From Antechinus flavipes (lineage: Eukaryota): a DNA stretch of 64,000 nucleotides. The notes below the pieces were generated by a model. It worked only from the letters and a program-made list of their open reading frames with translations, was not told where the DNA came from and did not search any database. Both the position numbers and the translations under genes were made by a program. Positions 258 to 54,714 of the stretch are shown here, in pieces. Numbering within the stretch: position 1 is the stretch's first letter; each line of letters opens with the position of its first letter. The stretch is from the NCBI RefSeq assembly GCF_016432865.1, contig NC_067399.1:441006001-441070000 (forward strand), written 5' to 3'.

Positions 258-1307
258 ATGAAAGGCCTCAGTGGGGACAGTCGAGGTCGCCACCTTTCAG
301 ACAGCCTGGAGCCACCACCCCCGGATGCTCTGTTCCCTGGATCTGACCGGAACCCCTACCTGCTGTCTCCAACGGCAACGGTGACGGCTGACCCCTTCTC
401 CCGTGAATCAGGATTCCCAGGAGCCTCAACTGCTGTGCCAGGGGATACCCTCTTCCCTCTGCCCAGCCCCCTGCCCACCAGTGGAACCTTCCCTCGCCTC
501 CACTACAATTCCCACTTTGAAGTCCCCGAGGAGGGCCCCTTCCCAAGCCATGCCCAAGCCACCAAGATCAACCGGCTGCCAGCCAACCTCCTGGACCAGT
601 TTGAGAAGCAGCTGCCTGTACATCGTGACGGCTTCAGTACTCTTCAGTTCCACCGGGCAGAGCCCCGGCCACGAGGGGAAAGCCCTGGGCGCATCCGACA
701 CCTGGTCCACTCAGTCCAGAAGCTCTTCTTTGCCAAGGCCCAGTCTCTGGAGGGTGGCGGCCTTAAGGGCAGTGGCAATGGCCGGAAAGGGGGAGCTGGG
801 GGCGGGGAGACCGGGAAGGGCCGGAGGGCCAAGGGCAAGGATTCAGCCAAGACAGCCGAGCCCAAACGGAGGAGCCGATCCAACATCTCAGGCTGGTGGA
901 GCTCAGACGACAACCTGGATAGTGGCAACAGTGGGGACTGTGGTTACCGGCCCCCAGCTGGGCTGATGACACTGGGTCGGCAGCCTGAACGGGCACAGCC
1001 ACGATACTTTGTCTACAATACCTTCAGTGAGCACATGCTGAAAGCAGCCAAGAACAACACTGAGCTCCCCCGAGGAGCAGGAGGAGCAGGAGGAGCAGGA
1101 GGGGGAGGAGGAGGAGGGGGAGGAGGGGCACCCCCACCTGCCAGCCTGCCTGCCAGCACAGAGGCTAGCTATGGCAAACGCGGCTCCTGGTCCACTCTGA
1201 CCCTCAGCCACGCCCGGGAAGTCTGCCAGAAAGCTTCAGCTACCATTGACAAGGCCCTGCTAAAGTCCAAATCTTGTCATCAAGACCTGGCCTACCACTA
1301 CCTTCAG
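258..1307 (+). CDS. DLGAP4: DLGAP4/SAPAP4 first coding exon (350 codons, ends phase 0)
   Basis: Translation MKGLSGDSRGRHLSDSLEPP...KINRLPANLLDQFEKQLP...GWWSSDDNLDS...SKSCHQDLAYHYLQ matches the recalled DLGAP4 N-terminus (not DLGAP1/2/3). Donor CAG|GTAATC at 1307/1308. Confidence 0.97.
1071..1130 (+). repeat. Coding GGA/GCA trinucleotide repeat encoding RGAGGAGGAGGGGGGGGGGA
   Basis: (GGA GCA GGA)3 followed by a GGA/GGG run, read directly in exon 1. Confidence 0.95.
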
Positions 1308-2072
1308 GTAATCTTGGGCTCCAAGAAGGGAATAATGGGGTGTGGGGGACCAGGAAGAACAGGCAAGAAGGAATCATGGGGTATGGCCTGAAGGAACCAG
1401 GATTTCCTTCTTTCGGCCATGTCAGAGCCATAACTTAACTCTCATAATATACCTTCTAAAGCAATTTTCAATTTACAAAAAGGAATAGAACTTTAACGAG
1501 TTTTACAATTTACAAAGAACTTTCCAAGAGAGCACTTCACAGTTTACAAGTAACTTATAAATGACAAATTTATGTGACAAATGATTTATATTTTATAAAG
1601 TACTTTACAGAGTGCAAGGTCCTTTATGTTGTTCAAAACATTTTTACAGTGATGACAGTATTTTTCTCATCCACTTCCATTGGATCATAACACAATAAGA
1701 AGACAAAGATCAGATATTATCATTCCTTTTTACAGGGGAGGAAACTGAGACCCCCCCACCAAGAAAAGAAGGGATTGTCTCACAATTACAACTTGTTAAA
1801 AGGGATTTCAGCATTGAACCTACTGTTCTAGGTTCTGCACATTGTTTCTCTTAACACTTTTACTTCTAGGTACTAAAGTATCTGAGTGTTCATTTAGATG
1901 AGATAGGATGGCCTATCTAAGAAACCAGAAACATTTGGAGAAAGAAAGAATTGTTTATTTTCTAATTTTTCAGGAGTGAAAATATTCAGACTTTAATCTC
2001 TACCTTTTCTGGGTGTCTAGAAGTAGTCACCTCTATAATACAATATGACAGGATCTAAAAGGATCTTCAAAT

Positions 2073-2147
2073 GTCCAGAAGCTTTTCTTTGCCAAGGCCC
2101 AGTCTCTGGAGGGTGGCAGTTTTAAGGGCAGTGGCAATGGCCAGAAA
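2073..2147 (+). repeat. 75-bp intronic copy of exon 1 positions 714-788
   Basis: Ungapped hand alignment gives 70/75 identity. All five differences are transitions. Confidence 0.95.
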
Positions 2148-2423: not shown

Positions 2424-2817
2424 GTAGGGCTTAGACTGTCATATCGGGTAGGATGTAAGGACAAAATGTCAGGAGGGTCCTTAGAAACTTGAACATCTAC
2501 TTGTAATATTAACTAAATTGGAGGAAAAAAGAAAGTTGAACATCCAAGATGGAAGGGACCCTAAAACATAGAATGTCATGTCAAAGATATAAGGGACTTT
2601 AGAATATAGAATATGCCAAGGATGGAAAGAACCTTAAGATGTCCATCCATTTTATAGATGGAAATACAGACATTTTATATCCAGAATGGAGGGTCCAGCC
2701 TGAGGTCACCGGGGTGGCGACAGTGGCTTTGCAGGGCTCTTGCCGTTTTCCATGTGACCGGGGCTCTGACAGTGGGACTTGGTGCTCTCTCTGTCCGTGC
2801 TGCTGTCCCCCCCTCAG

Positions 2818-3038
2818 GTGCCCCCAAGTGAGTGGAACAGTTCCCTCTCCAGGACGGGTGCGGACAGTGAGATTCCTTGCAGACGCATGCGCAGTGGGAG
2901 CTACATCAAGGCCATGGGTGATGAGGACAGCGAAGATTCGGACACCAGCCCCAAGCCATCCCCCAAGACAGCTGCCCGCAGGCAGAGTTACCTCAAAGCC
3001 ACCCAGCAGTCGCTGAGTGAGCAGAGCACCACCCACAG
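2818..3038 (+). CDS. DLGAP4: DLGAP4 coding exon 2 (221 nt, phase 0 to 2), two GK-binding repeats
   Basis: Acceptor ccctcag|GTG. Encodes VPPSEW...IPCRRMRSGSYIKAMGDEDS...SPKPSPKTAARRQSYLKATQQSL. Donor AG|GTGAGC. Confidence 0.97.
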
Positions 3039-4809: not shown

Positions 4810-5413
4810 GTGAGTCGCGGCTGCCACCTGGTGGCGGGCGCGAGTAAGAGCAGTTTCTGTGCCATCCAAGACCTCGGTCCGTCTTGCGCTAACCAGAATC
4901 CTTCCCCGCCCTCCGAGGTCTGCTGATGCTGACTTGCCTCGAGGGGCTGTTGATGAACGCCGCCCCACGAGCCCCATCCCCTCCATCGCAGTAGAATTTC
5001 TCCACGAGTTCTTTTTAAGAAGTACCAATTGTACTTCTGAGTCCCCTGGTGCTGAGGACAGCTCCTGCTCACCAGGAACCAAGGGAAGGCTCTTTCCTTT
5101 GCCCACCCCAGTGAGAGGATTCCCGCTCCCCGCCCCACACACTCCCCGCTCCCCACCCCCCACAGATACAGACCCTCCCGGAGCACCAAGAACAGGGCAG
5201 ACCAGCCCTGGGGGTCGGGGCCCTTTATTCCTGAGTTCTGCCCTCGAACTTGCTTCTTTATCCTCAGTCAAGTCATACCCCTTCTTGGCGCAGTCAGTCT
5301 CCTCCTCTGTAAAATGCAGGGGTTCTCCTCGGGCTTCTCCCTCTCCTCTCTGACGTTCTGGGAGTCTGTGAATCCCTGTTCCCTGGCATCAGCCTTCATT
5401 GTCTCCCCCACAG

Positions 5414-5528
5414 GAGCTTAGATCGCCTTGATTCTGTGGACATGTTGCTACCCTCCAAGTTCCCGAGCTGGGAGGAGGAATATAATCCCATTGGCAATAG
5501 CATTACCGAGTCCAGTTGCATCAATCAG
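5414..5528 (+). CDS. DLGAP4: DLGAP4 coding exon 3 (115 nt, phase 2 to 0)
   Basis: Acceptor ccccacag|G. Encodes (R)SLDRLDSVDMLLPSKFPSWEEEYNPIGNSITESSCINQ. Donor CAG|GTGAGA. Not listed in the ORF track. Confidence 0.95.
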
Positions 5529-8365: not shown

Positions 8366-11300
8366 GTACAGTATATCCATCATCTCACCCTCTCTCTCCT
8401 ACCTTTTCCCCCTGCCCTCCTTGTCCTCATCCCTCCTCCGTCTTGGGGGAATTCTTCCCCTCCAGCTCTGAGGCCCCAGAAGCAATGGCTGAGGGTGGGA
8501 CTCAAGGATGCCAGTCACTTTCTGGGAGGCTCCCCCAGCTCTGTGTTTGGCTCTGGGCATCTCATCCCAGGGCTGAGAGCGTACACTTCAAAAAGCCCTG
8601 ACTCCCTGGCTCAGTGTTCATCCCTGCAGGCCACACCAGGAAGGACTTTGATTTTCATACTGTAGCATGATTTAAGGAATGTTTTGCCAACCTGTGATTT
8701 CACTGGCATATAAAACTCCCAGTGAGAAATTTTCCTCTACCAAGGTATACCTGTCCTTGCTCTGCACTATGATCCCAAACAGTTATCTGGGGCACTGAGT
8801 GACTTGCCCAGAACCAGTATGTATCAGGAGTAAAATTTGAACCCACGCTGAGTCTCACTCAGCTTTAGCAGTAAAGACTCACATTTGAATTATGATTTAC
8901 TGTTTATAGAAAGCTTCCTTCACATAATCCTATGAGGGAAGCATACAGACATCATTCCTTTTCTAGGATACATATGTGTTCCTGCTATTGTATTATGTAT
9001 GTACCAGAGTTTCATATCTCAGCCCCTCCATACTTTTCATCCTATGTAATACATGTCCATGTCCTTCCAAAACTCACTTTTAAAGGAGCCATCCATCTCA
9101 TTAGAGACCCTCCTCAGGAGTTTTTTATACTATATTGTCAATCCCAGTGCAACTAGGAACAGTTTTATCTGTCATCACAAATTATTCTATGATCTTGTCA
9201 CCTAATTTTTCTGACATAAATGTATACGAAATATATATGTGTGTGTGCACACATATGTATATATGTACACATTTATGCTACACATATATGTACATTTATA
9301 TAAATGTTACTTTTTATTTAGGTCACCTGTGATTTTTATTCTTCTGAGGTTTAGTGTTCCATGATTGAGAGACATAAATATATGGCACTATGGTGAAAAT
9401 ATTGGTCTGTAAAAAAAAAAAAAAGGCTCTTGTAATAAAGATCAGTTTGGGAAATTTCCCAAGTACAGTCCATCCTGATCTCCTTCTGTCTGTCAATTCT
9501 GGGCCCATTGCCCATTTGAATTTCCTATCCAAGATATGTGCGTTACTGAACCAAGTCAACGAGCTGCAGATCCAACTCTCTGTCATAATCTGGGCAATAG
9601 GCATTTTTCATTCATCATCACTTGCTTTTTCCTGTGGATTAATAGCCAATCTTTTTCGAGAGGCCCTGGATCTCACTAAGGAGGCCTTTTAGTGTTCCCA
9701 GACTCAATTCAATTAACAGTCAATCAATTAATCAATCAACCCAACTTCCAGAGCACTTCATGATTTTTTAAAAAGGCTTTCCAGTTTCCAGAGCACTTTA
9801 CAGCACTTTTAAAGCCAGGAATCAGGAATGCAAATATAAAAGTGAGACAGTCCTTGCCCTCAAGGAGCTTACATTCTACTGGGTATTTTGTCATTTCCAA
9901 ATAAAAGCATGTGGAGAACTTCACTTTCTATACAGAATCTCACCATCTTTTTAACCTTAAACCAAGATATTCTTCATGATAATAATGGGCAAGCTACTTT
10001 GGCAACCATGCACCTTCCTGTTTTATTGATGGAGAATCATTAAAGTCATCTCTGGAATAGCATTCTATCAAGGAATATTGTGTGATTTTGAAAAATCCGT
10101 GGGAGATATCTTGTTGGAAAAGACCATCTAAGGCTACATCTTCCTCTAACAAGTCAAATAACAACAGTGGCAGTAATAAGCAGCAGTAATTTTATAGTGC
10201 TTTAAAATTTACCAGTTGTTTTACATACATTATCTCATTTAAGACTTGGGCAATTCTGGAAGGTACATACTTGTGGCTAGTGTTATCCTGCTCACTGATA
10301 AATCAGGAAACAGACTAAAAAGATTAAGCTAGTAAATGTTGGGGCACAATCTGAACTCAGGTCTTTCTTGAGCATGGTACAGAAGAGAGTTCTGAAATTG
10401 GAGTCAAGGGATTTGAGTTCAAATGTTGGCACCTTTCCCTACTACTTTTGTGATCTTAACCTCTTTAATATTACATTTCTTTATCTGAAAAAAAAAAAAA
10501 AAGGAGAAAGATAGATAGATTTAATGACTTCTGAGGTCCATTCCAAATCCAACTCTACAAACTTGCAACTTCAAGTTCAGAGGCAATGTGTTAGATTCAT
10601 TTTGTTTTGTTTCATAGTGAATGGAGAGCTAACTCTTAAGCCAATTAGGCCTGAGTTCAATTCCTGTCTCTGCCATATACTGCTTCCGTGACATATGGGA
10701 AAGCACTTAGTATTTTAAGTGCTCTAGTGATTTTTAAGACTATAACTTTCTTTTGAAAATTAAACCTATAAATTGCAAGGAAGATTCCAACCTGTATTGG
10801 TGGAGAAAGTTTCCTCACCTTTAACCAATGAAATCATGGGTCTAGTTTCTATTCTAGGAGGAGTTAGGTGGTGGAATGGATCCATTATAGGACCTGGGCT
10901 CAGGAAGACCTGAGTTCAAATGTCACTTCCTACTCTTAAGAGTTATTAAACTCTGAACAAGTTCCCTGTCCTCCATCTTCCTCAGCTTCCTGTCTATAAA
11001 ATGAGAATAATAATAGCATCTACATCCCGGGGTTGGTTTGAGGATTAAATGAGATGACTATAAAGCACTTAGCAGTGCATGGCACATAGTAAACACTAAA
11101 TAAATATTGGCTGTTGTAATTATTATTATTATTCCTGATCTGTAGTCAACAAACCATAAACTAAATATGGTTTTATATTCTCTATAGTTCCCAGTTAATT
11201 GGATTTTGTGAAGATGTGATCTAGATAGCTATTGAAAAAGCCCTTCTCATTTTCATCAAGGATATTCTATTATTATTAATTTTTTTTAGTAATGAGAGAG

Positions 11301-21915: not shown

Positions 21916-23995
21916 CCCAATTCACCTCTCCATCGGTAGGATATGATTTTCAATCCTTGGCTGGAGTGATTTTCAAATCCTGGTTCTCTGATCCCAAATC
22001 CAACACTCCTTGTACTGCACCATGCCATATTTGAAGCACTGTCATAAAGAAGAATTACCCTTGTTCTGTTTAACTCCAGAGGGTCAAACTAGGAGCAAAA
22101 GGTAGAGATTGCAAAGAGGCAGATTTCAGCTTGGTAGAAGGGGACAGTTCCTAACAATTAGATGTCTTCCAAAGTGGAGCAGTCTGCCATGGAAAGTTCT
22201 CTTTCACCGATAGTCATTAGTAAAGACTGGATAACCCCTGACATACCATGTGTGTAGCAGAGGGGACTATTCAGATAGCTTCTAGATTGGACAAGGGGGC
22301 TTCTAGATTCTACAGTTCTATAATTTGGTGTTGCTTATCCCTCAGGCTGTTATAAGGAAAGTACTTTCCAAATCCTGAAGTGCTATAGAAGTAGGTGTTA
22401 ATTACTGATATTCTCAAAGTACTATAAAAATGAGAATAAGGACATTATGGTAATAGTTTCATGAAGCCCTGCTCTAAAACTTCATCATAGCATAGAGATA
22501 ATGTAAGTTCTCTAAAGCTAAAACAATGAAGTCCAGATTCTGGAACAGAGGATTCTTAAGTATCTCCCAGTATCTTCTCTCTCTACCCCTCATAGAGTCT
22601 CTTGGTTTTAATTATTATTATTGCTCTGATGGTGATTTCCATTGTTGTATAGTATGAAAAAAGGACCCAATTCTAAAGTCAGAGGACCTGGATTCAAATC
22701 CTACCGTGGATACTTATTACTTGTATATGTTGTACAAGTCATTAACCTCTTTAAGTCTCAGTTTTGTCATCTGTAAAATGAAAATGTTAAACTAGATGTC
22801 CTCTGCAGTCCCTTTTAACTCTGAGTCTATGATCCTATATGATACTATAGTTCAAGCTTGCAAAACTTTAGTTCTATATTACCTGCCTCTTGGACAATTC
22901 CAACTGGATACTTCTTGGGCATCTCAAACTCAAAGTAGCCTAAGACAGAGCTTATCATCTTCCTCTCTGAAGCTCTCCCAACTTTCTCTGTCTTCATTGA
23001 GAGCATCACTATTCTTTCAGTCACCCATCACCCAAGTTCACAAGCTTAAAGTCCTCCTCAGCCTTCCTCACCCCTCATCCTTTTTGTGGTTGAATTTGAT
23101 TCTATTTCTCAAATATCTTTTGCAACTATATCCTTCCCTCAGGGAATGTTTCTTTTCTACTGCTACATTCCTAGTGCTTAGCACAGTACCTAATGTGTAA
23201 TGGGCACTACCAAATGCTGTTGGATTTATAACTCCTAACATGCAGGAAGCAAATGCTTCAAGTATGGTTCCAGCAATAATTGAGTCTGTTTGGCCAAGTA
23301 AGGGGAGACTGGTTCCTTGGTAATAAGCTCTTTAGCCATGGCCACCCAAATGATAGCCAAAAATACAAACCCGCTCTCAAATCTGTCTGGCCTCCTTCCA
23401 CCTCTGCAGTAACTGAGGCAGAGTAACAAAGGAAAAGATAGAAGGAGCTAAGAATCGCACACAGATGTTTGTTTTTTTTTAATGAACAAACATTTATTAA
23501 GCACTATTTCAGGGCCAACCACTGTGCTAAGTGCTGAGAATACAAATACAAAGTAAAAATAGTCCCTACGCTCAAAGAGCTTGTGGGAAGAAGATGTATT
23601 TTGGTTTGTAAAGTCAGAGATATAGCCCATATAAGTTTGGAAACTGTTTATATCAAATCCCACTACTGGGTCCACTAACTCTAAACTCTGGGGAAACAGT
23701 TTTTATACAGTCTATAAACTTCTACTTAACTTGTGGTAGTCTAAATGGAAGAACCTTGGCTAATAATCAAATGGCTAATCATGGTCATGGACAAAAGTTG
23801 CACTGGATAGGTAACCATGGAAGGGCATCTGGGAGGAAATGCCCCTCTCAATAACAGGTCTAGTGGTGTTTGTGAATAAGAACCTTAAAAACTTTACATA
23901 TGGGAGTTCTGGTTATCATTATTATGCACCTCAAGTCTAATAGCAGACTTAGAACACCATAGATAATGGGAGTTACTATTTTTCTTCTTCCCCAG

Positions 23996-24224
23996 GTCAG
24001 GGAGGCAGAGCTGAGTGACCAGTATGAGGCTGCCTGCAGTGAGGCTGAGTCCGCCACTGCTGATGTTCTGGACTTGCCTCTCCCCAGCTACTTCCGCTCT
24101 CGGAGCCATAGCTACCTTCGGGCCATCCAGGCGGGCTGCTCCCAGGATGAGGACAGCATCTCCCTCCAGTCCCTCTCTCCTCCACCCACAGGCAGCAGCC
24201 TGAGCAGCAGCCGCACACTGCCCA
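23996..24224 (+). CDS. DLGAP4: DLGAP4 coding exon 5 (229 nt, phase 0 to 1), GK-binding repeat
   Basis: Acceptor ttcttccccag|GTC. Encodes VREAELSDQYEAACSEAES...LDLPLPSYFRSRSHSYLRAIQAGCSQDEDSISLQSLSPPP...RTLP. Donor CCA|GTAAGT. Confidence 0.97.
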
Positions 24225-26164
24225 GTAAGTCCTGCTTCGAGAGGGGAGGAGGGTGGAAGGGATGGCGGGGCCAGGGAAAAGGAGGCATTCACTGGGAACA
24301 TGGACTACAGTTTTGTGAATCTGTTTGCTGAGAAACCAAGTAAGATAATGGAAGGAGAGCAGGATTTTGAGTCAAAGACTCTCAGTTCAAATCTTGCTTC
24401 TACTTTTTGGGTCACTGGGGAAAAAATCAGTTTCTTCCTCTGTAACAGGAATCTTTGAGCGCTATATCAGATTATCCCTCTGATGCCAGTTTGTGTATCC
24501 TATCATCCCCTATTCTCTAGTGATCCTGGTGGGCAGACAGAGAAGTCGCTAGTTTACCTGGGCTTGTGGGTACTGATTGTGTCATACAGGTGCTAAGTGA
24601 TTCCCAGAACACAGTGAGAGAAAAATTTTATGGACTCAGCCTCCCAGTAGCTGGGTTGAACATTGGGCTCTTGTGCACTCAGAACTGGTTGAAAAGGAGA
24701 CCATGGGGGGTCTCCTTCAGCGTTGTCTTCAATAGCTAGATGATTCAGTAGAGTACTGGGGCTGGAGTCAAAAAGACCTGAATTCAAATGCAGCTTCACA
24801 CACTTACAGGGCAAGCCATTTAACCTTTGTCTTGGTTTCCTAACTATAAGAGAAGAAATAATAGCACCTACCTCAAAAGGTTGTGAAAATCAAATGAGAT
24901 AATATTTGTAAAAGTACTTAGCACAAAAAAAAAAGACTCAATCAAAGAATAAAGAGGGAAAGTGGCAACAATTTAAACAACAAAAAAAGTACTTAGCACA
25001 GTAACTAGTACATAGTATTATAGTAGTAGGTACTATATAAATACTTATTCACTTCATGTCAAATATCTGAAGAGCTATCATGTGGAAGACATGCTTAATA
25101 AATGCTTGTTGATAGACTGGTTTGGATTGTCTCAAAAAATGGTGAGTTTTTTAATCATTGCATGTCTTCAGGTGGAAGCTATATGATTACTTGTTCAGGA
25201 TTAGTAGTAAATCAATCAATTAGCATTTCTTAAGCACCTTCTATGTGACAGGCACTTTGCTAGTCACTGCTTATTAGATTTTTGATTTTTGAATCAAAAT
25301 GGAGAGAGAGTTCTAGTACACTGAATTTAACTGAACCTACCAGAAGCCCAGAGGATCTGGATTCAAGTTCCACTTTTTGTGTTGGCTGTGTGACTTTGGA
25401 CAAATCACTTAACTTCTCAATTTCTCGGGCATTTTTGTATGACTTTGTACATATGCAGAATAATTGCTTATCTGTTCTATTAGAGAGAGTTCCCCCCCCC
25501 AAAAAAAAAAAATTAGCACTTGTCTTTGAAGAAACAACATGGTAGAAAGAGAACCTGATTTGTAGTTAGTTTCAAATCTTTGCTCAACTTCTTGCTTGCA
25601 GTGGGACTCTTCCCTTTTCTGAATCTGAGCTTCTCCATCTATAAAAATGAAAGAATTGGACTAGATAACTATAGAGCTTAAATCTAAACTCCTCACTTTA
25701 TGAAGGAAAAAACTGATGCTCAGAGAGGTTATGGATCTTGCTCATAGTCACACAGCGAATAAGTATCTGAGGCAGGATTCTGAACAGTGAATGTTCTTTC
25801 TGCCTTTTTCTTCCAATTCTCTAATCCAATGCATCAAAATGTCACTGAGACCCTTTTTACTTCAAAATCCTTTGCTCTCATGCTAGACAATGAACAAATT
25901 GGGATCAATGAAGATTTTGAGGCCAGAAAGTTGAGTGTCATCCAATAAGAAAGATTTACAAGGTACGAGAATGAGGAATCCAAGATAATATCCAGCCTGG
26001 AAGATAGAATAAATGATAGTACCATTAATAGAGACAGGAAAGTCAAGAGGAACAATTTGAGGCAAAAAATAAAACAATATAAAGCTAAGCTTAGTTTTGT
26101 AGGATGGTAAAAGATCCCTGGATTTGTAGTTCAGGCACGTGGGTTGAAATTGTGGCTTAAACTA

Positions 26165-29945: not shown

Positions 29946-31983
29946 TTATTGTCTAAGAGCTTGCCTGACCTGACAGACTTATGTGGAGTTTCCATCAGTG
30001 CCCCTAATTCTGTATAAGAAAAACACAGATTTTACTTGCCAAAAGAAGAAAGAATGGATCTTCTTCTACTTTACTCCTTTCCTATAAAGTCTGATAACTG
30101 GGATGTCCTACCCGAAAATGGGCTTCATGCAGGCAAGACTTCTGGATTTAGAGTGGATAGCTAGCTATGGGATTCTCTCTTAACTTTGGACTTTTTTAAA
30201 CCCCACCCTTTCCTGGTCTTCAAACTCTAAGGCCAGAACCTCAGTTTCCTTTTCTAGACAATGAAGAGGTTGGAGGCAGTATGGTATAACAGGTTTGGAG
30301 CCACAGGACATGGGTCCACATCCCACCTTTACTATTTACAACTTAGACAAGTTAATTAACTTCTCTGGGCCTCAGTTCCCTCATGTGTAAAATAAGATTA
30401 GAGCAAATGGCCTTTCTGATTCCTTCCAACTTTAGCTCTATGATCTTATGGCACCCGAGGTCTCTTCCACCTCTAACATTCTATTTATTCTGTTCACTAG
30501 TATTTATGTAGACAAAGTTTTAAGGTTTACAAAGCACTTTGCAATATTATCTCAGATGATCCTTATGACAACCCTATAAGATAAGGGTTTTTATTATCCA
30601 CATTTTACAAATGGGGAAACCAAGGCAGACAGGCTTGCTTAGTGTCATATAACTAATATGTGTCAGATTGGATTGAACTCAGGTCTTCCTGATTCTAGAA
30701 CCAGAGCACTATCTGCTATGTCAACTAGCTGCCTTTTATTCTATTGTTCTAAGAATCCACGGCTCTATTTTCTATGGTCCCAAGATTCCATAATTCCAAT
30801 ATTCAATGTTGTATGATTCTATAATTTTATCATTCTTGTTTACTCTCTGTGCTTACATTCATATATATGTATAAATATATATGTATACATATATATGCAT
30901 TTTTAGAGAGAAAGAATTTTGAATAGAGTTTGACTGGCACACACATATACATTCATAAATCAGGGAGCTATATTTCATCAGTATAGATGCTCCGTATCAA
31001 AATAGATCACACAATTTGTCCATAACTTAGTCAATAGTCTTCAATTTCTCTTTGCTTAGCCTGATAAGTTTCTACCCCACCCTTGAGGTGGGGTACTGAG
31101 GCAACAAACCAACACACCTGAGATTGTATTGTAGGTCTTTCCAATTGGATGGGAGCCACTAAAGCTTGTGCTCCATTAATATGGCCTTCAAGAACTCCAT
31201 AATAAAGCATAAAGAAACTTGAATGGAATAAACCAGTCAGAGTTGATAAACATTTATTAAGTACCGACTATGTGCCAAGCACTGGGCTAAGTGCTAGGAA
31301 TAAAAAAAAATAATAAAAAGAAAGACATAAGACCCTGCCTTCAAGAAGATCACACTGGAATGGGAAAGCTAAACTGGGAGGAGGTATAGAGGCATGCAAT
31401 CAGGGTGGGAAATTATCTGAGGAGGTGTGAATTTCTGCACTGATTTCATCTTGCAAAGTGGTGAATTTCTAGCGTAGATGAAGAACAAAAAAAGTAGCAG
31501 GTGGGAAATGAAAAGAATTCCCTGAATGCCCTTCTTACATAGTGGAGAATGTAGGAGGAACTCTCCAAGGTCAAATCTCCACCCTTTCCAATGAGAGGGA
31601 GGGAAGAGCCCGAGGGGTAGGAGGTGCTAGGATTCAGTGTTTCCTAGTTGATTTCATCTTGCAGAATGACAAGTTTCTGGAGATAAGCAACTTGGTATAG
31701 TGCATATAGAGCCACCTTTGAATCCAGGAAGATCAAAATCCAAGTCTCATCTTTGACACATTACTGGCTGTTGACTCAATATTGTCTGTGACCCTGAACA
31801 AGTCATTCAATCACAGCTCTCCAGACTACAAGTTGTAGAGAAAATGCTTGTATTAATAGGAGTTCCCTCTTGGGGAATTCCCCATACCAAAGAACTTACA
31901 AGTTTTTGTTGCTTCCCTAACATAGATAAAGAGGTAGATATGAGAGGTGCCCATAGCATAGTGGATAAAAGAGCTGCCCTGAG

Positions 31984-32135: not shown

Positions 32136-34479
32136 GTTTAGTCATAGACTCATAGGATTTAGAATGGGAAGAGCCCTTCAGATTATTTAATTCAATCTCC
32201 TCTTTTTGCAGATTAAAAAAATAAACCTGAGGTCAAAAAGGGAAGGGACTTGGCCAATATCAGAGTAAAGATTCCAGCCTGTGTCCTTTCACTCCAGCAA
32301 AGCTGAATTAAATTCAAGGTAGAAACTAGACATCGTAACTATTGCCTCTTAGTGAAAACTATGGGTGTGATGCAAGGCTCCTTCCAGACAGACCCTGCCT
32401 CCCCCCCTTTTTTACTCCCACACACCAGTCTTGTAGCATGTATCTCTCTCAGGAAAGGGTTCAGCAGGCAGGAATAGCAATGCCTCAGAGCCCTGGCTTG
32501 CTCGTCAGGGTGGGAGTTGCTTAGTACTGATGCCAAGTAAGGCATCAAAATTCCTACTCAATTCTACTACCAGCTGACCTCCAGGCTGCTGAAAAACAGG
32601 AAGCAGCATGATCAGCTCTTTTGGACAGACCTATACAATGAAGAGAGTCTTCAAGTCATCCAACCTCCAGCTCCCCCTCTCCTGTCTCCCACTGCTTCTT
32701 CTCCCAGAGTTCTTGGGCCCCCCTCTGAATGTACAAAGCTCTTCCCAGGCCTGCCAGCCATGGTGGTACCAAGTTATCCCTCCTTCCTCTGCCCCATGCC
32801 CTCTGTCCCATGCTTTCAGTGGGAGGATTTCAGCAACCTGATAACACTAAGGATTCTGATATGGTGGAAATGGTTCTAGCCAAATAACTAATTGAAGTTC
32901 TGACATTGTTCTGACATTTATGACCTCTGTGATTCTAAATAAGTCACTTAACGTGACCCTCAGTTTCCCTATCCATAAAACAGGAACAATACTACCTGCC
33001 TCACCTACCCCACAGTGATGTTATAGAAGAGATTGCTCATATTATTACCATTTTACCACTACATTGCCTTTAAAGTGATATGTCATTCATTTGATCTTCG
33101 TAATAGTCTACTGGGGGATGCTGAGCAAGAGTTATCCAATTTTACAGAAAGGGAGACTGAGACCTAGAGCCAAGAAATGACTCCAGTTCAATTTAACAAG
33201 CATTTATGGTCTATGAGTTAGACATTGGATTTGTAAACGTCTTTTGCCTTTAAGGAGCCTTTGTGGGGGATGAAGGGAATATAGTAAAAGAATCATACAA
33301 AATAAAAACAGTAATTTGGCAGGAGATAACTCTTGAACTGAGACTTAGGGGGAATAAGATGGTGAGGAGAAAGAGCGTTCTAGCAGTGCTAAGGCAGTGA
33401 ACATGGAGATGGAGTGTTTGTGGGTTAGAAAAAAAGGCTTAATTTGGGTAGGAAGGCAAGAGTGGGCGGGGGGGGGGGGTAACAAGACTGGACAGATAGG
33501 TTGGAGCCAAGTTGTAAAGAGCTCTGAGTATCCTAGAAGCCATAGGGAAACGCTTATGTTGAGTAGGAAATAGATTCTTCTCTCAAGAGGAAACAGCCAG
33601 TCAGTCAACAGCCAGGGACAAAGTAGTCCACTTAGCTGGGTGTAGACCATGTGAAAGGAGGAGTAATATAAAAAGCATAAAATCTAAACAGGTGGGTTAG
33701 TGCCAGGTTGTGATAAGCCTTGAATGCCAGGATCAGGAGTTTAGACAAAAAATAAATAAGCATCCACGGAAGGTTTTTGAACAGAGTAGTAGGGAATATG
33801 CTTAGTATCGATGTGGCCTCCTTTTTTCCTTCTGCAAAATGAGGGGATTGGAACTAGATGACTCCCTAAAACTCTTTTTAGCTCTAAATCTATGATCAAA
33901 TGTTAGGAAAATTATAGCTCCAAGAGGATGAAATTGCAAAGGGAGACAGCCAGATAGGAGACTAATCATCTAGGTCTGAAGGTTTGAATTGGTTTAGGTT
34001 AGTGGAGAAAAGTTAAGTACAAGATTGTGGAGTTTAATGAAGTTACAGGACATGGCAACTAATTTTTTTGGATATGTGATGACAGCATGCCCCTTCCTCA
34101 CTCTGGACCTGTTTCTTCTGTAAAATGAGATAGCTGAGCCACCCTGTCCCTTCGAGCCCTAGTATTTGTGATTCTCAAAGCCCTGATTGCCCTTTCAAAT
34201 GCCTCTTGAATGCTGCTTATTTAATACCTAGGATTTATAGAACGGTCCTCGGGAATGGGATAGAGAGAAGGCTGTCTGTCTTGTCCAGGACATCCTTTTC
34301 GGAGAAGAGCTTGTTAAAGTGGCTGTAGCCCTGACTACTGGCCTAGGAAGAAGGAAACAAAAGGAGAACAGAAAGAGAAAGGGGTAGGGAAAGGGTAAAG
34401 GGAGTCTGCGGGGAAAAAATGGGGAGGATTGATTTGTCAGATCGCTGCCAGCTCGCCACCATAGGATGGTGTGGGCTGA

Positions 34480-36400
34480 GCTGAATTGAACTAGCCAGCG
34501 GGCGATCGGAAAGCACACACCACTCGTGTTCTCAAAAGGTGGCAGCGGCTGGCCCGTGGGCACCAGCCCGGGACTTCGGCACTGAGCATGTGCAGGATGC
34601 CAGCTGGGAACAGCACGGGTGGGGCTGGTCCCGTGCAAGACGCTGCGAGGACCAGGAGAACTAGTAACTGCGGGCGTGCCTCAGCCGAGGCAAACTCGCC
34701 CGGCGGAATACCGCTTTCCCCGCCTGCAGGACCTATAGCGCAGCGGGCAGGACGTTTGCGGGTGGGTGTGCCCACGCTGCTTCCAGGGTGCACAGAACAT
34801 GTGCGCGCTCGTGCAGTGCGTGCACCCGCCCGCGTGGGGGAGTTGTGCACGTGCGTAGGCGCGCTCCGCACTGGAGTATAGTTGTGCTTTGTCGTGCACG
34901 TCTGATTGGATGTCGTTGTGCACGCATGTTTCCTACCCGCCCTCCGCCCCGTATGTAAGTGCACGCCCATCCAGTCCTACCCGTGGTCGCGTGCGCGTGC
35001 ACTCCCGCTCTGTTGGGTTAGCTTGGGGTTGCCTGTGTGCATCCCCCCACCCCCTTACCCTGCATCTCCAGGGCGGGCACGTGCACACACGAGCGTGGAC
35101 TCCCTGCGTGCACTCGACGCACTGTATTGCGTGTGCGCGTGCATGTGTTCCTAAATCCGTCCCTTCCCGGGCCCCCCCTCAACCCCCCACCCCTCCACTG
35201 CCGCCGCGCCCCAGAGCCCAGGGAAGGAGGGAGGGGGAGAGGCCGGGGGAGCCGCCGCGCGGCCGGTGACGCGGGCCCGGAGGTGGGGCCGCGCGCGGGG
35301 CTTTAATCCAGAGGCCCCTCCCCTTGCAAGTACATCAGCGGAGCGGCCGGGGCTGAGCGAGGGAGGAGGGTGAGTTGCAGCCGCCCCCACCGGGCTCTCC
35401 CTGTCTCCGTGCGCCCTCGGCTCTGGCCGAGCCACGAGCCGCCGCCTTCTCTTCCCCCAGCGCGGGCGTCCCGCGACCGTCCTGGTGTCCGGGCCCGGGC
35501 CCCCGAGCGCGCAGCCCAGCGCCGCCGGACCGGCCACGCCGGGGCTTTGTGCCGGGAGCGGGCGGGGCGGGGCGGACTCCGGCTTCCTCCCAGGCTCCGG
35601 CCTCTGGCAGCCAAGGGGACTCCTCCTCCCGGAGCAGACCGAGGCACTGCTGCCTCCCCGCCCTCTGTCTGTGTGTCTCTGTCTCTCTCTCTCTCCTCTC
35701 TTCCTTCTCTCCCTCTTCTGTCTTTTTCTGTCTCCGCCCCTACGCCCCTCGGGTCTCATGGCTTTGTGTCTGGACCTCTTGAAGCAATGTGAGTGGAAGC
35801 GATTTTGTGGTTTTTTGCCCCCCCCCAATCCGCGCCAGCATGAGGGGCCGAGTCCGGCCCCGGGGGCTCGGCCCGGCTCGGCTCTGTTCTGCTCGGCTTG
35901 GCTCGGCTCGGCTTGTGTGGCTGGCCCCGGAGGGAATGCTCGAAGGCTCGTTAACAAAGCGGGGCTGGGGGCCCACGCCCTGGGAATGGGGGAGGGGGCT
36001 GCCGCTTTGTGCGCGGGGGCGCGCGGGGGGGAGGGCCCCCGGCTTGGCGGGGGGCTGCTGCCGGAGCTCTCCAGGAGGTGGACGGGAATGGAGCGGACTC
36101 TGCTTGCCTGGCCTGGGCCGACCCGACTCTCTGCTGCCACGGACTCTGCGCTATTTTAACCTGCCTGGGCTATTTCAGATCCCCACAGGATATGAGCTCA
36201 GCTCCCGTTTATTTCTGGGAGCCTGGCTTTGGGGTGGGGAGAGGGAGATGCCGGTTACTCAGCTTGAGTTGGCCTCTACTAGCCCCCGGAGCCCTGGGCA
36301 GCTTCCCCGAACTGGTATTTTTAAGGACAAACTTTGCAGGGGCCTCTCCGCCTTCCGGGGCTTTCTTAGGACCCTGACTTCAGCCAGCATATTACCCCAG
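34480..36400. promoter_or_regulatory. DLGAP4: Intragenic CpG island / internal promoter of short DLGAP4 isoform(s)
   Basis: Very GC- and CpG-rich against an AT-rich, CpG-poor background. Many GC boxes (CCGCCC/GGGCGG), an inverted CCAAT at 34905-34909, G-runs. Contains the MALCLDLLKQ exon. Confidence 0.9.
35758..35788 (+). CDS. DLGAP4: Coding part of the alternative first exon of the short DLGAP4 isoform, MALCLDLLKQ(C), phase 1
   Basis: ATG GCT TTG TGT CTG GAC CTC TTG AAG CAA T|GTGAGT. Phase 1 matches the end of exon 5. Peptide matches the recalled human short-isoform start MALCLELLKQC. No AG between ~35644 and 35782, so it is a first exon rather than an internal one. Confidence 0.88.
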
Positions 36401-38659
36401 TTGTACCATCTTCTTCCCACTGAGGGACAAGGATTCAGAACATCTCAGCTATATAGGGATAAAGAGGAATTAATCTCAATGTGACATTATGGAGATTCTC
36501 CCTGATGATAGTTGGGAGGGAGAGAGGAAGGGAAGGAAAGCTGTCTATCTGTAGAAAATGCAGTTGGCATCTATTGTAGATTCAGTTTATAATGATGGGT
36601 AATTAAGCTGGGCATGTAATGATAGGCGGGTGTGCGCCTTTGGGAAGGGTTGTTGAAATAGTCTGTTGTATTTTCCATCCTCTCATGTTAGAGCCTCCTC
36701 CCTCTCTCACCCTTCCCTTCTTTTTTAGCCTCCTTTGGTTGTCTCCTGCCTCCTTTTTTTTTTCTTTCTTTCTTTTCTTTTTTTTTCTTTTTTCTTTTTG
36801 GCTTGTTGCACTAGCTGACAGCTTTGTTCCTGAGAGGGAGTGACTCAATGTACCCAGAGTTGAGCCCTACCCTATCCACCCCCTTCTCTGGGTGACACAG
36901 CCCCAAGCAGCAAAAAGCTCTTCCTCCTCAACCCCCAATTCCTTCCATCAGTCTTGCAGGGGAACAAAAACACAGAAACACAGAAGGAAATTCTAAAAAG
37001 AGTGAGGTTACTTGAAAAATCTCAGAGCCAGGAGACTTAAGGATCATTCATTCCAACCCCTTCATTTTACAGATGAAGAAACTAAGGTTCTAAGAGAGGA
37101 ATGGACAGTCTTTTAGGACATGTCAGTTCAGTGGCAGCTTGAGAGAGATAATAAGCATGTATATATAGCACCTACTAAGTGCCAGGCACTGATTTTATTT
37201 GAGCCTTTCCTCCTTTTAAAGTAGGGCCAAAACTAGGAAATAATCTAAGGAAGAGGGGGGGGAGGGGAATCAATGAGATATAGTGGAAAGAGAAACTGAC
37301 ATGAGAATAAGATGTTTTAAATAAGGTTTGTTTTGCTAATTTACTATGTGACCCTGAATTAGGCAATTTTTCTCTCTGAAAGATCTCCACTCACTTATAA
37401 TGGGGCTAATAAACGCTGCCTCTTGAAACACAGGGCTGGCGAAAGGAGATGACTATATTTAATAGAAATCTATACTTCAGAATTGGAGCAGTAATGCTCT
37501 CTATATTGCCCATCTAGCCACCAAATTGTGACAGGAGATGGGATGCTCATTGTCTCCTCTGGCCCCAAATTCATTTTGGGAGGGTTTTTTTTTTTTTTTT
37601 CCACATCTGTCCTTTGTTAATTGATTGTTATTAAGTGAATATAATAAGGGAAGGAAGGGAACTAGGTGACCTTTTGGTGGTCCTTTACCTATAAGAATCC
37701 TGCAGATTGAGGAGAAAGAAAGGCAGCCTAGGTCACCAAACTCTCTTTTTCATGACACTTTACTGATTACAAAGCACTTGTCACAAGGACTAGTGGGAAG
37801 GTACTGGAAGGAGCACTGGTTTTGGAGTCTGAGGACTTGGATTTGAATCCTTCACCAAGCTATTTGAGTGACCTTGGCCAAGCTACTCTGCCTCCTCTGT
37901 AAAGTGCAAGGTCACAGCTTCATGATCTCTAAGGTTCCTTGCAGATCTAATTCATATTGTGGTCTTATGAGAACTCACAAGTGGGGGAATTTGAGGTCCA
38001 AAGAAGGAAAGAAACATAACAAATCACATATACAAGTCAGGACTTGAATCCAGGTCCCTTGATGGTACCTGTCAGCTCTTGAATCAATTAACATTCTTTG
38101 TGGTGATGTTATTACTTGACTTCCCTGGATCTCAGTTCTTTCATCTGTAAAATTCTTTCATCTGTAAAATCAGTGGTTTAGACTAGATGGTCTTATAGAT
38201 TCTTTCCACTCTAAATCCTTGATCATCTGTGACCTAGTTCAGAGACAGCTGCAGTTGTCTAAGTGTGGGATGTCATGCTTAGAAGTAACATTGATGGATT
38301 GTTTTTTGGGGTAAAGGAGGAAGCTTAGATGAGCCTGGATAGTCTTTCCCACACACTCTTCCCCAACAGGTAGATATTGGAGGGGGTGGGGCAGTATTTA
38401 GGTGAGTGTTTTTATGGACTGAATATGTGTAAGAATCTCTAGCCTTGAATGCCTTGAGTTCTCTTCCTCCAAAAAAAAAAGCCACCTTTTAAAACCTCTA
38501 CTGCAGTAAGGGTGTTTGATAATAGGAAAAGAAGCACAATCTTCATCCCAGATAGGAAGTGATATAGAGTGAAGTTGCCTGGATCCCCCCCGATGGGGGG
38601 GTAAGGGGTGGGACAAGACCAGAGAGATGGGCTACTACTGCAGCAGGGTAGGGTATCAA

Positions 38660-54683: not shown

Positions 54684-54714
<31 letters not shown>
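54684..54714 (+). repeat. (TG)n microsatellite
   Basis: Read directly from the sequence. Confidence 0.95.

What the first reader, a model, noticed from the sequence alone, without database searches (positions are those of the whole stretch)
34786..35148. Dense array of GTGCAC palindromes and MRE-core motifs at the internal DLGAP4 promoter
Seen: GTGCAC occurs nine times in 326 bp (34788, 34820, 34845, 34894, 34918, 34959, 34997, 35081, 35108). A hand estimate at ~65% GC expects about 0.1. The spacing is irregular, so this is not a tandem repeat. The same stretch has 13 matches to TGCRCNC on either strand (+: 34802, 34821, 34919, 34960, 34998, 35082, 35109; -: 34786, 34818, 34995, 35035, 35106, 35137), interleaved with GC boxes and an inverted CCAAT. 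Established: TGCRCNC is the metal-response-element core bound by MTF-1, and MRE arrays with Sp1 sites define metallothionein promoters; the SAPAP partner Shank is Zn-dependent. Inference: the short DLGAP4 isoform could be zinc/metal-inducible. Alternatives are bHLH-PAS sites (RCGTG/TCGTG are also common here) or NRF1-type binding.
Basis: partly seen in the sequence, partly recalled or inferred. Interest (0 to 1): 0.72.

Follow-up and report, generated by a model that had tools for sequence, protein, structure and literature searches.

The report
Lineage-specific GTGCAC palindrome cluster, DLGAP4 promoter
Nine copies of the palindrome GTGCAC really are packed into 326 bp just upstream of an internal DLGAP4 promoter in this marsupial genome. 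The look-alike metal-response motifs are a side effect of that word, and the cluster is absent from the same promoter in placental mammals, so zinc control of DLGAP4 is not supported.

Summary

GTGCAC is about ten-fold over local dinucleotide shuffles (9 against 0.8, maximum 5 in 5000). It is the top hexamer cluster of the whole 64 kb (block shuffles never exceed 7). The real unit is the palindrome, usually (G)CGTGCAC, set in seven short alternating purine-pyrimidine (Z-DNA-prone) tracts. It is not a tandem repeat, and the flanks of the copies are unrelated.

The MTF-1 reading fails:
- 10 of 13 MRE cores are just TGCAC inside the palindrome.
- The cores free of the palindrome are at chance level.
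- The extended MRE consensus is not enriched.
- No paper found links DLGAP4 to MTF-1.

The gene is DLGAP4 of a marsupial (92% identity to Tasmanian devil). The array lies 134-496 bp upstream of a 105-bp core block with a splice donor that is conserved with muntjac, so "internal promoter" is supported.

At the same offset, muntjac has no GTGCAC, one MRE core and no alternating tracts. Hamster, tree shrew and brushturkey, read up to their assembly gaps, also have none. The array is therefore lineage-specific.

Best reading (confidence about 0.4): a promoter-proximal cluster of sites for an unidentified dimeric factor, helped by Z-prone DNA. A neutral origin remains a serious rival.

The parts
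34786..35148 (.). [quoted passage not shown] It is the most CpG-rich part of the island (CpG o/e 0.98).
34788..34793 (.). GTGCAC site 1 (GGGTGCACAG), the only one without a flanking CpG.
34820..34825 (.). GTGCAC site 2 (TGCGTGCACCCGCCC), inside alternating tract 34816-34825 and abutting a GC box.
34845..34850 (.). GTGCAC site 3 (GTTGTGCACGTGCG), overlapping an E-box CACGTG, in alternating tract 34844-34857.
34894..34899 (.). GTGCAC site 4 (TCGTGCACGT, an 8-bp palindrome CGTGCACG), 6 bp upstream of the inverted CCAAT.
34918..34923 (.). GTGCAC site 5 (GTTGTGCACGCATG), in alternating tract 34917-34929.
34959..34964 (.). GTGCAC site 6 (AAGTGCACGCCC).
34997..35002 (.). GTGCAC site 7 (CGCGTGCGCGTGCAC), in the 15-bp alternating tract 34988-35002.
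35081..35086 (.). GTGCAC site 8 (GGGCACGTGCACACACG), overlapping an E-box, in the 15-bp alternating tract 35077-35091.
35108..35113 (.). GTGCAC site 9 (CTGCGTGCACTCG).
34797..34808 (.). 12-bp alternating purine-pyrimidine tract without a GTGCAC.
35128..35148 (.). 21-bp alternating purine-pyrimidine tract (TGCGTGTGCGCGTGCATGTGT), the longest in the array, without an exact GTGCAC.
34905..34909 (-). Inverted CCAAT (ATTGG).
35282..35384 (+). Core block conserved with the muntjac DLGAP4 intronic CpG island (79% over 106 bp, E 2e-18). It holds a TATA-like CTTTAAT (35301-35307) and GGAGGAGG|GTGAGT (donor GT at 35370). Inferred to be a core promoter plus a short first exon.
34401..36001 (.). CpG island (GC at least 0.6, CpG o/e at least 0.65 in 500-bp windows) that the array borders on its 5' side.
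258..1310 (+). DLGAP4 first coding exon (351 codons), 92% identical to Sarcophilus harrisii DLGAP4.
23972..24247 (+). Last DLGAP4 coding exon upstream of the array (…SYFRSRSHSYLRAIQAGCSQ…). The array lies about 10.5 kb into the following intron of the long isoform.

Best explanation
The array is a lineage-specific, promoter-proximal cis-regulatory module of the internal (short-isoform) DLGAP4 promoter of a marsupial. It consists of nine copies of the 6-bp palindrome GTGCAC, eight of them as CGTGCAC and five as GCGTGCAC, scattered over 326 bp with unrelated flanks. It lies 134-496 bp upstream of a core promoter block that is conserved between marsupials and placentals.

A perfect palindrome repeated at irregular spacing is what a homotypic cluster of sites for a dimeric DNA-binding protein looks like. 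Many weak sites raise local occupancy of one factor. The sites sit in alternating purine-pyrimidine tracts of 10-21 bp that can flip to Z-DNA under transcription-driven negative supercoiling, which would help keep the region nucleosome-poor.

Shown: the word excess, its palindromic unit, its independence from simple alternation and from duplication, its position relative to the conserved block, and its absence from placental orthologues.

Inferred: that a protein reads it, that it acts on this promoter, and which factor. Among the tested consensus words only RCGTGC, the HIF/ARNT-type half site, is enriched, and only because it is part of the palindrome.
For: GTGCAC occurs 9 times against 0.79 +/- 0.85 in local dinucleotide shuffles; CGTGCAC 9 against 0.52; GCGTGCAC 5 against 0.19. 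The family-wise maximum over all hexamers and places in 64 kb is 5-7 in 150 block shuffles, against 9 observed. Permuting purines among purines and pyrimidines among pyrimidines inside the alternating tracts still gives only 0.96 +/- 0.94. Other alternating hexamers (GCGCGC, TGCGCA, CACGTG, GTGCGC) are not enriched. Flanks of +/-12 nt are no more alike than at random places (7.39 against 7.79 +/- 0.48 of 24) and TRF finds nothing, so the copies are not recent duplicates. Of 21 TGCAC, 18 are preceded by G. CpG o/e is 0.98 with four GC boxes and a CCAAT, as in a germline-unmethylated proximal promoter. The core block 134 bp downstream is conserved with muntjac and ends in a consensus splice donor. 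Homotypic site clusters are a known feature of vertebrate proximal promoters (PMC6360817). Alternating tracts of at least 10 bp act as activating promoter elements in reporter assays (PMC9105345).
Against: No vertebrate factor known to read GTGCAC was found. Literature hits for the word are Plasmodium ApiAP2 motifs and single oligonucleotides. The array is absent at the same offset in muntjac and in the readable parts of hamster, tree shrew and brushturkey, so there is no evidence of purifying selection. The scan looks at very many windows, so a rare chance or mutational cluster cannot be excluded by statistics on one window.
Confidence: 0.4

Rival explanations
1. Neutral by-product. This would be a lineage-specific patch of cryptically simple, CpG-rich alternating sequence, produced by slippage, gene-conversion-like copying of very short words, or biased substitution in an unmethylated island edge, with no function of its own.
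For: The array is absent from all four other amniote orthologues examined. The marsupial upstream region does not align with the upstream block that placentals share. GTGC/GCAC four-mers (30 against 12.6) and alternating tracts in general are in excess, as in cryptic simplicity. No known factor matches.
Against: Slippage of CGTG or CACG units would give GTGCGT or GCACGC runs rather than isolated GTGCAC separated by 24-84 bp of unrelated sequence. Flanks show no copying. Related alternating hexamers are not enriched. Random CpG decay of GCGCGC would give GTGTGC, GCACAC and GCATGC as often as GTGCAC, but GTGTGC/GCACAC occur at the expected rate (3 against 2.15).
Confidence: 0.25
2. The primary element is a cluster of Z-DNA-forming tracts (flipons). 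Seven alternating purine-pyrimidine tracts of 10-21 bp absorb negative supercoils behind polymerase and keep the promoter open. GTGCAC is then merely the favoured filling of such tracts.
For: Seven of the window's 39 tracts of at least 10 bp lie in these 363 bp (19 per kb against 0.6 per kb; local shuffles give 2.4 +/- 1.3, p 0.003). 174 of the 363 nt lie in alternating runs of at least 6 nt (shuffles 112 +/- 16). Z-DNA motifs of at least 10 bp raise promoter activity, and longer ones more so (PMC9105345). Z-DNA-forming sites mapped by ChIP concentrate at active promoters (PMC5066173).
Against: Alternation does not explain the choice of word: GTGCAC is about nine-fold over expectation inside the tracts, while the better Z-formers GCGCGC and CGCGTG are not enriched. 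Four of the nine palindromes sit in runs shorter than 10 bp.
Confidence: 0.2
3. Cluster of bHLH-PAS response elements (HIF/ARNT, AHR/ARNT, SIM or NPAS4 with ARNT2) built on the RCGTG core, giving hypoxia-, xenobiotic- or activity-dependent control of the short isoform.
For: RCGTG occurs 15 times against 6.45 (p about 0.001) and RCGTGC 12 times against 2.4. Eight of the nine palindromes carry CGTG on one side.
Against: RCGTG not overlapping a GTGCAC is at chance (7 against 6.45). XRE TNGCGTG is 2 against 0.65 and the extended XRE 1 against 1.6. NPAS4-type TCGTGA is 0. These heterodimers read asymmetric sites and give no reason for a perfect palindrome. Only consensus words could be tested, because no weight matrices were available.
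Confidence: 0.1
4. One reading: an MTF-1 metal-response-element array that makes the short DLGAP4 isoform zinc- or cadmium-inducible, as in metallothionein promoters.
For: There are 13 TGCRCNC cores in 363 bp against 2.25 expected, interleaved with GC boxes. Seven one-mismatch matches to the HT-SELEX core TGCACACG occur against 1.8 expected.
Against: Ten of the 13 cores are TGCAC inside the palindrome and the remaining three are at chance. Only 3 of the 24 TGCRC have R = G. G precedes 18 of 21 TGCAC, which the MRE does not require. The extended consensus is not enriched, and no core has more than 3 of 5 matches to the 3' gGCCc that PMC9820605 links to affinity. There is no exact TGCACACG. Muntjac has one core at the same offset. 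None of the 15 best-ranked papers of a DLGAP4 / MTF-1 text search mentions DLGAP4.
Confidence: 0.04

Closest known systems
[quoted passage not shown] 2010, as described in PMC6360817)
   Same: Many copies of one short word occur within a few hundred bp just upstream of a core promoter, at irregular spacing, mixed with Sp1-type GC boxes and a CCAAT box.
   Different: The word matches no vertebrate factor that I could find. The cluster is not conserved in placental or bird orthologues, whereas described clusters are defined with known matrices and are often conserved.
Metallothionein-type MRE arrays bound by MTF-1
   Same: Several TGCRCNC cores on both strands lie among GC boxes within 500 bp of a start site.
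   Different: The cores here are a by-product of a palindrome. They lack the 3' gGCCc extension, are almost all TGCAC rather than a TGCAC/TGCGC mix, and are absent from orthologous promoters.
Z-DNA-forming alternating purine-pyrimidine tracts at promoters (for example the HO-1 TG repeat in PMC3664823; the MPRA class in PMC9105345)
   Same: Alternating tracts of 10-21 bp rich in CG and CA/TG steps lie upstream of a start site.
   Different: There are seven short interrupted tracts rather than one long dinucleotide repeat. One specific hexamer is strongly preferred, which Z-forming potential does not predict.
Dioxin- or hypoxia-responsive enhancers with multiple RCGTG cores (CYP1A1-type XRE clusters, HRE pairs; recalled from general knowledge, not tested against their sequences)
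   Same: The CGTG core is repeated in a CpG-rich upstream region.
   Different: The flanks do not fit the XRE consensus, and the core excess vanishes once the palindromes are set aside.

Membership tests
MTF-1 metal response element array | Multiple TGCRCNC cores near the start site | tested here: met
   13 cores in 363 bp against 2.25 +/- 1.5 in shuffles.
MTF-1 metal response element array | The core excess is a property of the MRE itself and not of another overlapping word | tested here: not met
   10 of 13 overlap GTGCAC and the 3 free cores match the chance expectation of 2.25. 18 of 21 TGCAC are preceded by G.
MTF-1 metal response element array | Extended consensus NTGCRCNCgGCCc (PMC9820605) or the SELEX core TGCACACG (PMC10047149) | tested here: not met
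   12-mer at up to 2 mismatches: 2 against 1.0 (p 0.28). Best 3' flank match is 3 of 5. Exact TGCACACG: 0.
MTF-1 metal response element array | MTF-1 occupancy and induction by zinc or cadmium | not testable with these tools
   No ChIP or expression data could be reached. The top-ranked papers of the DLGAP4 / MTF-1 text search do not mention DLGAP4.
Homotypic cluster of transcription-factor sites | Significant local excess of one motif in a proximal promoter | tested here: met
.
Homotypic cluster of transcription-factor sites | The motif corresponds to a known factor | tested here: inconclusive
   Text searches give no vertebrate factor for GTGCAC or GCGTGCAC. Only consensus words could be scanned, not weight matrices.
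Homotypic cluster of transcription-factor sites | Conservation in orthologous promoters | tested here: not met
   0 GTGCAC at the same offset in Muntiacus, and 0 in the readable parts of Cricetulus, Tupaia and Alectura. Other marsupials could not be reached.
Z-DNA-forming promoter element | [quoted passage not shown] | tested here: met
   7 tracts of 10-21 bp against 2.4 +/- 1.3 in shuffles; a 32-fold higher density than the window average.
Z-DNA-forming promoter element | Actual B-to-Z transition in chromatin or supercoiled DNA | not testable with these tools
   No structural assay or Z-Hunt-type energy model was available.
bHLH-PAS response elements (XRE / HRE / NPAS4 site) | Excess of RCGTG cores with the family-specific flanks | tested here: not met
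   RCGTG free of the palindrome is 7 against 6.45. TNGCGTG is 2 against 0.65, KNGCGTGMSA 1 against 1.6, and TCGTGA 0.
Tandem repeat / minisatellite | Head-to-tail units or residual similarity between units | tested here: not met
   TRF finds no array over 34786-35148 at score 30 or more. Flank identity is 7.39 against 7.79 +/- 0.48 of 24.
Structured RNA | Match to a known RNA family or unusually stable fold | tested here: not met
   No Rfam match at E up to 1 over 34000-35700. Fold z-scores are -1.9 and -1.6.

The most novel reading that the evidence does not exclude
GTGCAC (extended GCGTGCAC) is the site of a dimeric DNA-binding protein whose specificity has not been described. On this reading, a marsupial lineage built a nine-site cluster for it de novo, replacing the upstream promoter block that placentals share and rewiring control of the widely expressed short DLGAP4 isoform. 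This would be a dated, clean example of wholesale proximal-promoter turnover upstream of a core that stayed fixed.
Probability: 0.12. Interest if true: 0.55.

Novelty: new member of a known kind. Interest (0 to 1): 0.3.

Why it matters
If the palindromes are read by a protein, this would be an unusually dense and clean homotypic cluster for a word with no assigned vertebrate factor. It sits next to a core promoter conserved for about 160 million years, which makes it a convenient natural experiment in promoter turnover at a synaptic scaffold gene.

As it stands, the useful result is mostly negative. The attractive zinc / Shank / SAPAP story rests on a motif coincidence. It should not be carried over to human or mouse DLGAP4, whose relatives examined here lack the array.

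Tried and rejected
1. Tandem or segmental repeat origin was rejected. TRF finds nothing, the repeat finder gives only 10-19 nt families built around the word itself, and flank identity is at background.

2. Pure purine-pyrimidine alternation as the cause of the word excess was rejected by the within-tract permutation.

3. Random CpG decay of GCGCGC was rejected because the sister products are not enriched.

4. An RNA element was rejected: no Rfam hit and weak fold z-scores.

5. RNA and start-site evidence could not be obtained. The look-up of sequencing runs listed runs holding 0.12-0.28 of the sampled words of 34600-36600, one of them certainly RNA.

6. The first orthologue attempts did not reach the internal island. 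These were the N-terminal partial models of Marmota, Chelonia and Herpetotheres with 10-kb flanks. Five further models were not on record.

7. The bird, tree-shrew and hamster loci have assembly gaps exactly at this island. They were left unfilled, so only muntjac gives a complete comparison.

8. Other marsupial genomes could not be reached. Look-ups were exhausted, the gene is probably longer than 100 kb, and a joined spliced query was not made.

9. Weight-matrix scans (JASPAR MTF1, HIF1A, AHR::ARNT, NPAS4, NRF1, HES/HEY) were not possible. Only consensus words were used. Recalled resemblances (TCFL5-like GCACGCGCAC twice, a SIM half-site GTGC, a PAX-like GCACGCATGT) are leads from memory only and were not tested.

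10. No human or primate locus was fetched, and unnamed Logan/ENA contigs among the protein hits were not opened.
Full report
**Observation**

These are nine of only 16 copies in the 64-kb window. The 13 TGCRCNC matches are also at the stated coordinates and strands. The stretch is 64% G+C with CpG o/e 0.98. That is higher than the rest of the island (0.66 for 35148-36500).

Dinucleotide-preserving shuffles of the 363 bp give 0.79 +/- 0.85 GTGCAC (maximum 5 in 5000) and 2.25 +/- 1.5 MRE cores. The excess is robust nonetheless.

I also asked how often any hexamer with at least three different letters reaches such a count anywhere in the window. In 150 shuffles of 400-bp blocks the maximum was 5-7. 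In the real window GTGCAC, with its shifted form CGTGCA, is the top cluster at 9, and the next unrelated word reaches 6.

**What the unit is**

Strand-collapsed k-mer statistics point to the palindrome with a CpG on one side:

| Word | Observed | Expected |
|---|---|---|
| GTGCA | 21 | 3.4 |
| CGTGCA | 11 | 1.1 |
| CGTGCAC | 9 | 0.52 |
| GCGTGCAC | 5 | 0.19 |

Eight of the nine sites are CGTGCAC or GTGCACG. Pooled over both orientations, C is at -1 in 9 of 18 cases and G at -2 in 10 of 18. Beyond that the flanks are at background.

Of 21 TGCAC on either strand, 18 are preceded by G. That is nine palindromes against three non-palindromic TGCAC (binomial p 0.004). The palindrome is therefore the selected or generated unit, not the 5-mer shared with the MRE.

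**Not a repeat**

- Tandem Repeats Finder reports nothing over the array even at score 30.
- The repeat finder gives only 10-19-nt families centred on the word.
- The +/-12-nt flanks of the nine sites are no more alike than flanks of random positions (7.39 against 7.79 +/- 0.48 of 24).
- Spacings of 24-84 bp show no helical phase.

**Alternating tracts**

Every site lies in a run of alternating purine and pyrimidine.
- 174 of the 363 nt are in such runs of at least 6 nt (shuffles 112 +/- 16).
- Seven runs reach 10-21 bp. That is 7 of the window's 39 such runs, or 19 per kb against 0.6 per kb. Local shuffles give 2.4 +/- 1.3 (p 0.003).
- By the definition used in a promoter MPRA study (alternating tracts of at least 10 bp), these are Z-DNA motifs. 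In that study they raised promoter activity, and longer ones did so more (PMC9105345). Z-DNA-forming sites mapped by ChIP are concentrated at active promoters (PMC5066173).

Alternation does not explain the word, however. I permuted purines among purine positions and pyrimidines among pyrimidine positions inside the runs. This gives 0.96 +/- 0.94 GTGCAC (maximum 5 in 5000). GCGCGC, TGCGCA, CACGTG, GTGCGC and CGCGTG are not enriched. The same result argues against random CpG decay of GCGCGC, which would give GTGTGC, GCACAC and GCATGC as often as GTGCAC.

**The MRE reading**

- Ten of the 13 cores overlap a GTGCAC by at least 3 nt. The three that do not (34802, 35035, 35137) match the chance expectation of 2.25.
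- Only three of the 24 TGCRC have R = G.
- The longer consensus 5'-NTGCRCNCgGCCc-3' is quoted in PMC9820605, which attributes the low affinity of one MT1A element to a missing gGCCc. Here no core has more than 3 of 5 matches to GGCCC. The 12-mer at up to 2 mismatches occurs 2 times against 1.0 expected (p 0.28).
- The HT-SELEX core TGCACACG (quoted, and doubted, in PMC10047149) has no exact match.
- A text search for DLGAP4 together with MTF-1 terms gave no paper with both among the best-ranked.

- RCGTG is 15 against 6.45, but 7 against 6.45 once the palindromes are set aside.
- TNGCGTG is 2 against 0.65.
- The extended XRE is 1 against 1.6.
- TCGTGA is 0.
- CACGYG is 8 against 2.5.
- NRF1 at up to 1 mismatch is 3 against 0.54 (p 0.04).
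- RCGTGC is 12 against 2.4, purely through [GA]CGTGCAC.

**Gene and position**

The ORF at 213-1391 starts MKGLSGDSRGRHLSDS…. Codons 258-1310 are 92% identical to DLGAP4 of Sarcophilus harrisii and 62-68% identical to bird, reptile and placental DLGAP4. The window is therefore from a marsupial other than the Tasmanian devil.

Further exons map at 2815-3024, 5364-5492 and 23972-24247 on the + strand. The array lies about 10.5 kb into the next intron, on the 5' edge of the window's only CpG island by my criteria (34401-36001). Human DLGAP4 has a brain-specific long isoform and broadly expressed shorter ones (PMC4222360; PMC5583998).

**Orthologues**

Through full-length DLGAP4 models I fetched the whole gene of four species:

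| Locus | Species |
|---|---|
| L004 | Alectura lathami |
| L005 | Tupaia chinensis |
| L006 | Muntiacus reevesi |
| L007 | Cricetulus griseus |

In each, a CpG island lies in the same intron, after the SHSYLRAIQ exon.

Identity is 79% over 106 bp, E 2e-18. The block reads GGGGCTTTAAYCCAGAGGCCCC…GTACA…CGGAG…GAGGGAGGAGG|GTGAGT in both species. It holds a TATA-like element (35301-35307). About 30 bp further is GTACA, and about 40 bp after that a consensus splice donor (GT at 35370). I infer a conserved core promoter with a short first exon. This is not shown, because no reads could be laid.

The array is then 134-496 bp upstream of the block. At the same offset, muntjac has 0 GTGCAC, 1 MRE core, 3 RCGTG and no alternating tract of at least 10 bp. 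The 362-363 bp before the assembly gaps in hamster, tree shrew and brushturkey have 0 GTGCAC and 0-2 MRE cores.

The three placentals share another upstream block among themselves (…GCATGCGTCGCGTTCCAGCTGGAACCGGTTT…GGGCGGCTGGAGG…). Muntjac against hamster is 78% over 138 bp, and muntjac against tree shrew is 88% over 57 bp. The marsupial has nothing alignable to it.

So the core has been kept since the marsupial-placental split, while the proximal upstream region differs. The GTGCAC array is specific to the marsupial side, or to a narrower lineage. I could not tell how narrow.

**Mechanism**

The most economical reading is a homotypic cluster of sites for a dimeric protein in a proximal promoter. 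This architecture is known to be enriched in vertebrate promoters (PMC6360817). Here it sits in DNA that is also prone to the Z conformation.

I put this at 0.4. The rivals are:
- a neutral lineage-specific patch, 0.25;
- Z-DNA as the primary function, 0.2;
- a bHLH-PAS cluster, 0.1;
- the MTF-1 array, 0.04.

What would separate them is listed under next steps. The cheapest test is a multi-marsupial alignment.

**Constraints observed**

- Assembly gaps in L004, L005 and L007 were left as they are.
Exon 1 was searched by reference only.
- No human or primate locus was fetched.

**Earlier notes of this scan**

These notes concern other aspects of the same window, namely candidate internal promoters and N-termini. 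The array itself had not been noted elsewhere. Searches of the notes by word and by sequence found nothing.

Noticed in passing
window 35282-35384 (L006 23628-23732): A 105-bp block is conserved between this marsupial and muntjac (79%, E 2e-18). It has a TATA-like CTTTAAT and ends in GGAGGAGG|GTGAGT. It is probably the conserved core promoter and short first exon of the short DLGAP4 isoform.
   Followed up: partly
L006 23348-23484; L007 20059-20192; L005 29065-29119: Placental mammals share an upstream promoter block containing the palindrome GTTCCAGCTGGAAC and GC boxes (78-88% between orders). The marsupial has no alignable counterpart in the position of the GTGCAC array.
   Followed up: partly
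window 35660-35745 and 35865-35913: A polypyrimidine TC-rich tract of about 70-85 nt (TRF rows 35668-35734) lies inside the island, and a (GGCTC)n array of 9.8 copies lies just downstream. Both are possible non-B DNA elements near the promoter.
   Followed up: no
L004 23428-24198; L005 29160-29984; L007 20200-21397: Three independent assemblies (brushturkey, tree shrew, Chinese hamster) have gaps exactly at this intronic CpG island. This suggests the region is generally hard to sequence. The gaps were not filled.
   Followed up: no
window 2070-2147 (+): A stretch in intron 1 translates to 26 residues that are 85% identical to residues 152-177 of Tasmanian-devil DLGAP4, which are encoded by exon 1. 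It looks like a small duplicated exon fragment.
   Followed up: no
window 258-1310 (+): The first coding exon has 351 codons against 324 aligned residues in Sarcophilus. It carries a long Gly/Ala-Gly run (…GAGGAGGAGGGGGGGGGGGAPPP…) that appears to be a lineage-specific expansion.
   Followed up: no
window 1472-1800: The second-densest non-related hexamer cluster of the window is TGTAAA, six times within 330 bp just downstream of the first coding exon. This is within the range seen in shuffles (5-7).
   Followed up: no
window 9231-9295, 30860-30952, 54684-54714: There are other long alternating purine-pyrimidine tracts of the AT/TG microsatellite kind, including (TG)15. Unlike the array they are simple repeats and lie far from any CpG island.
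   Followed up: no
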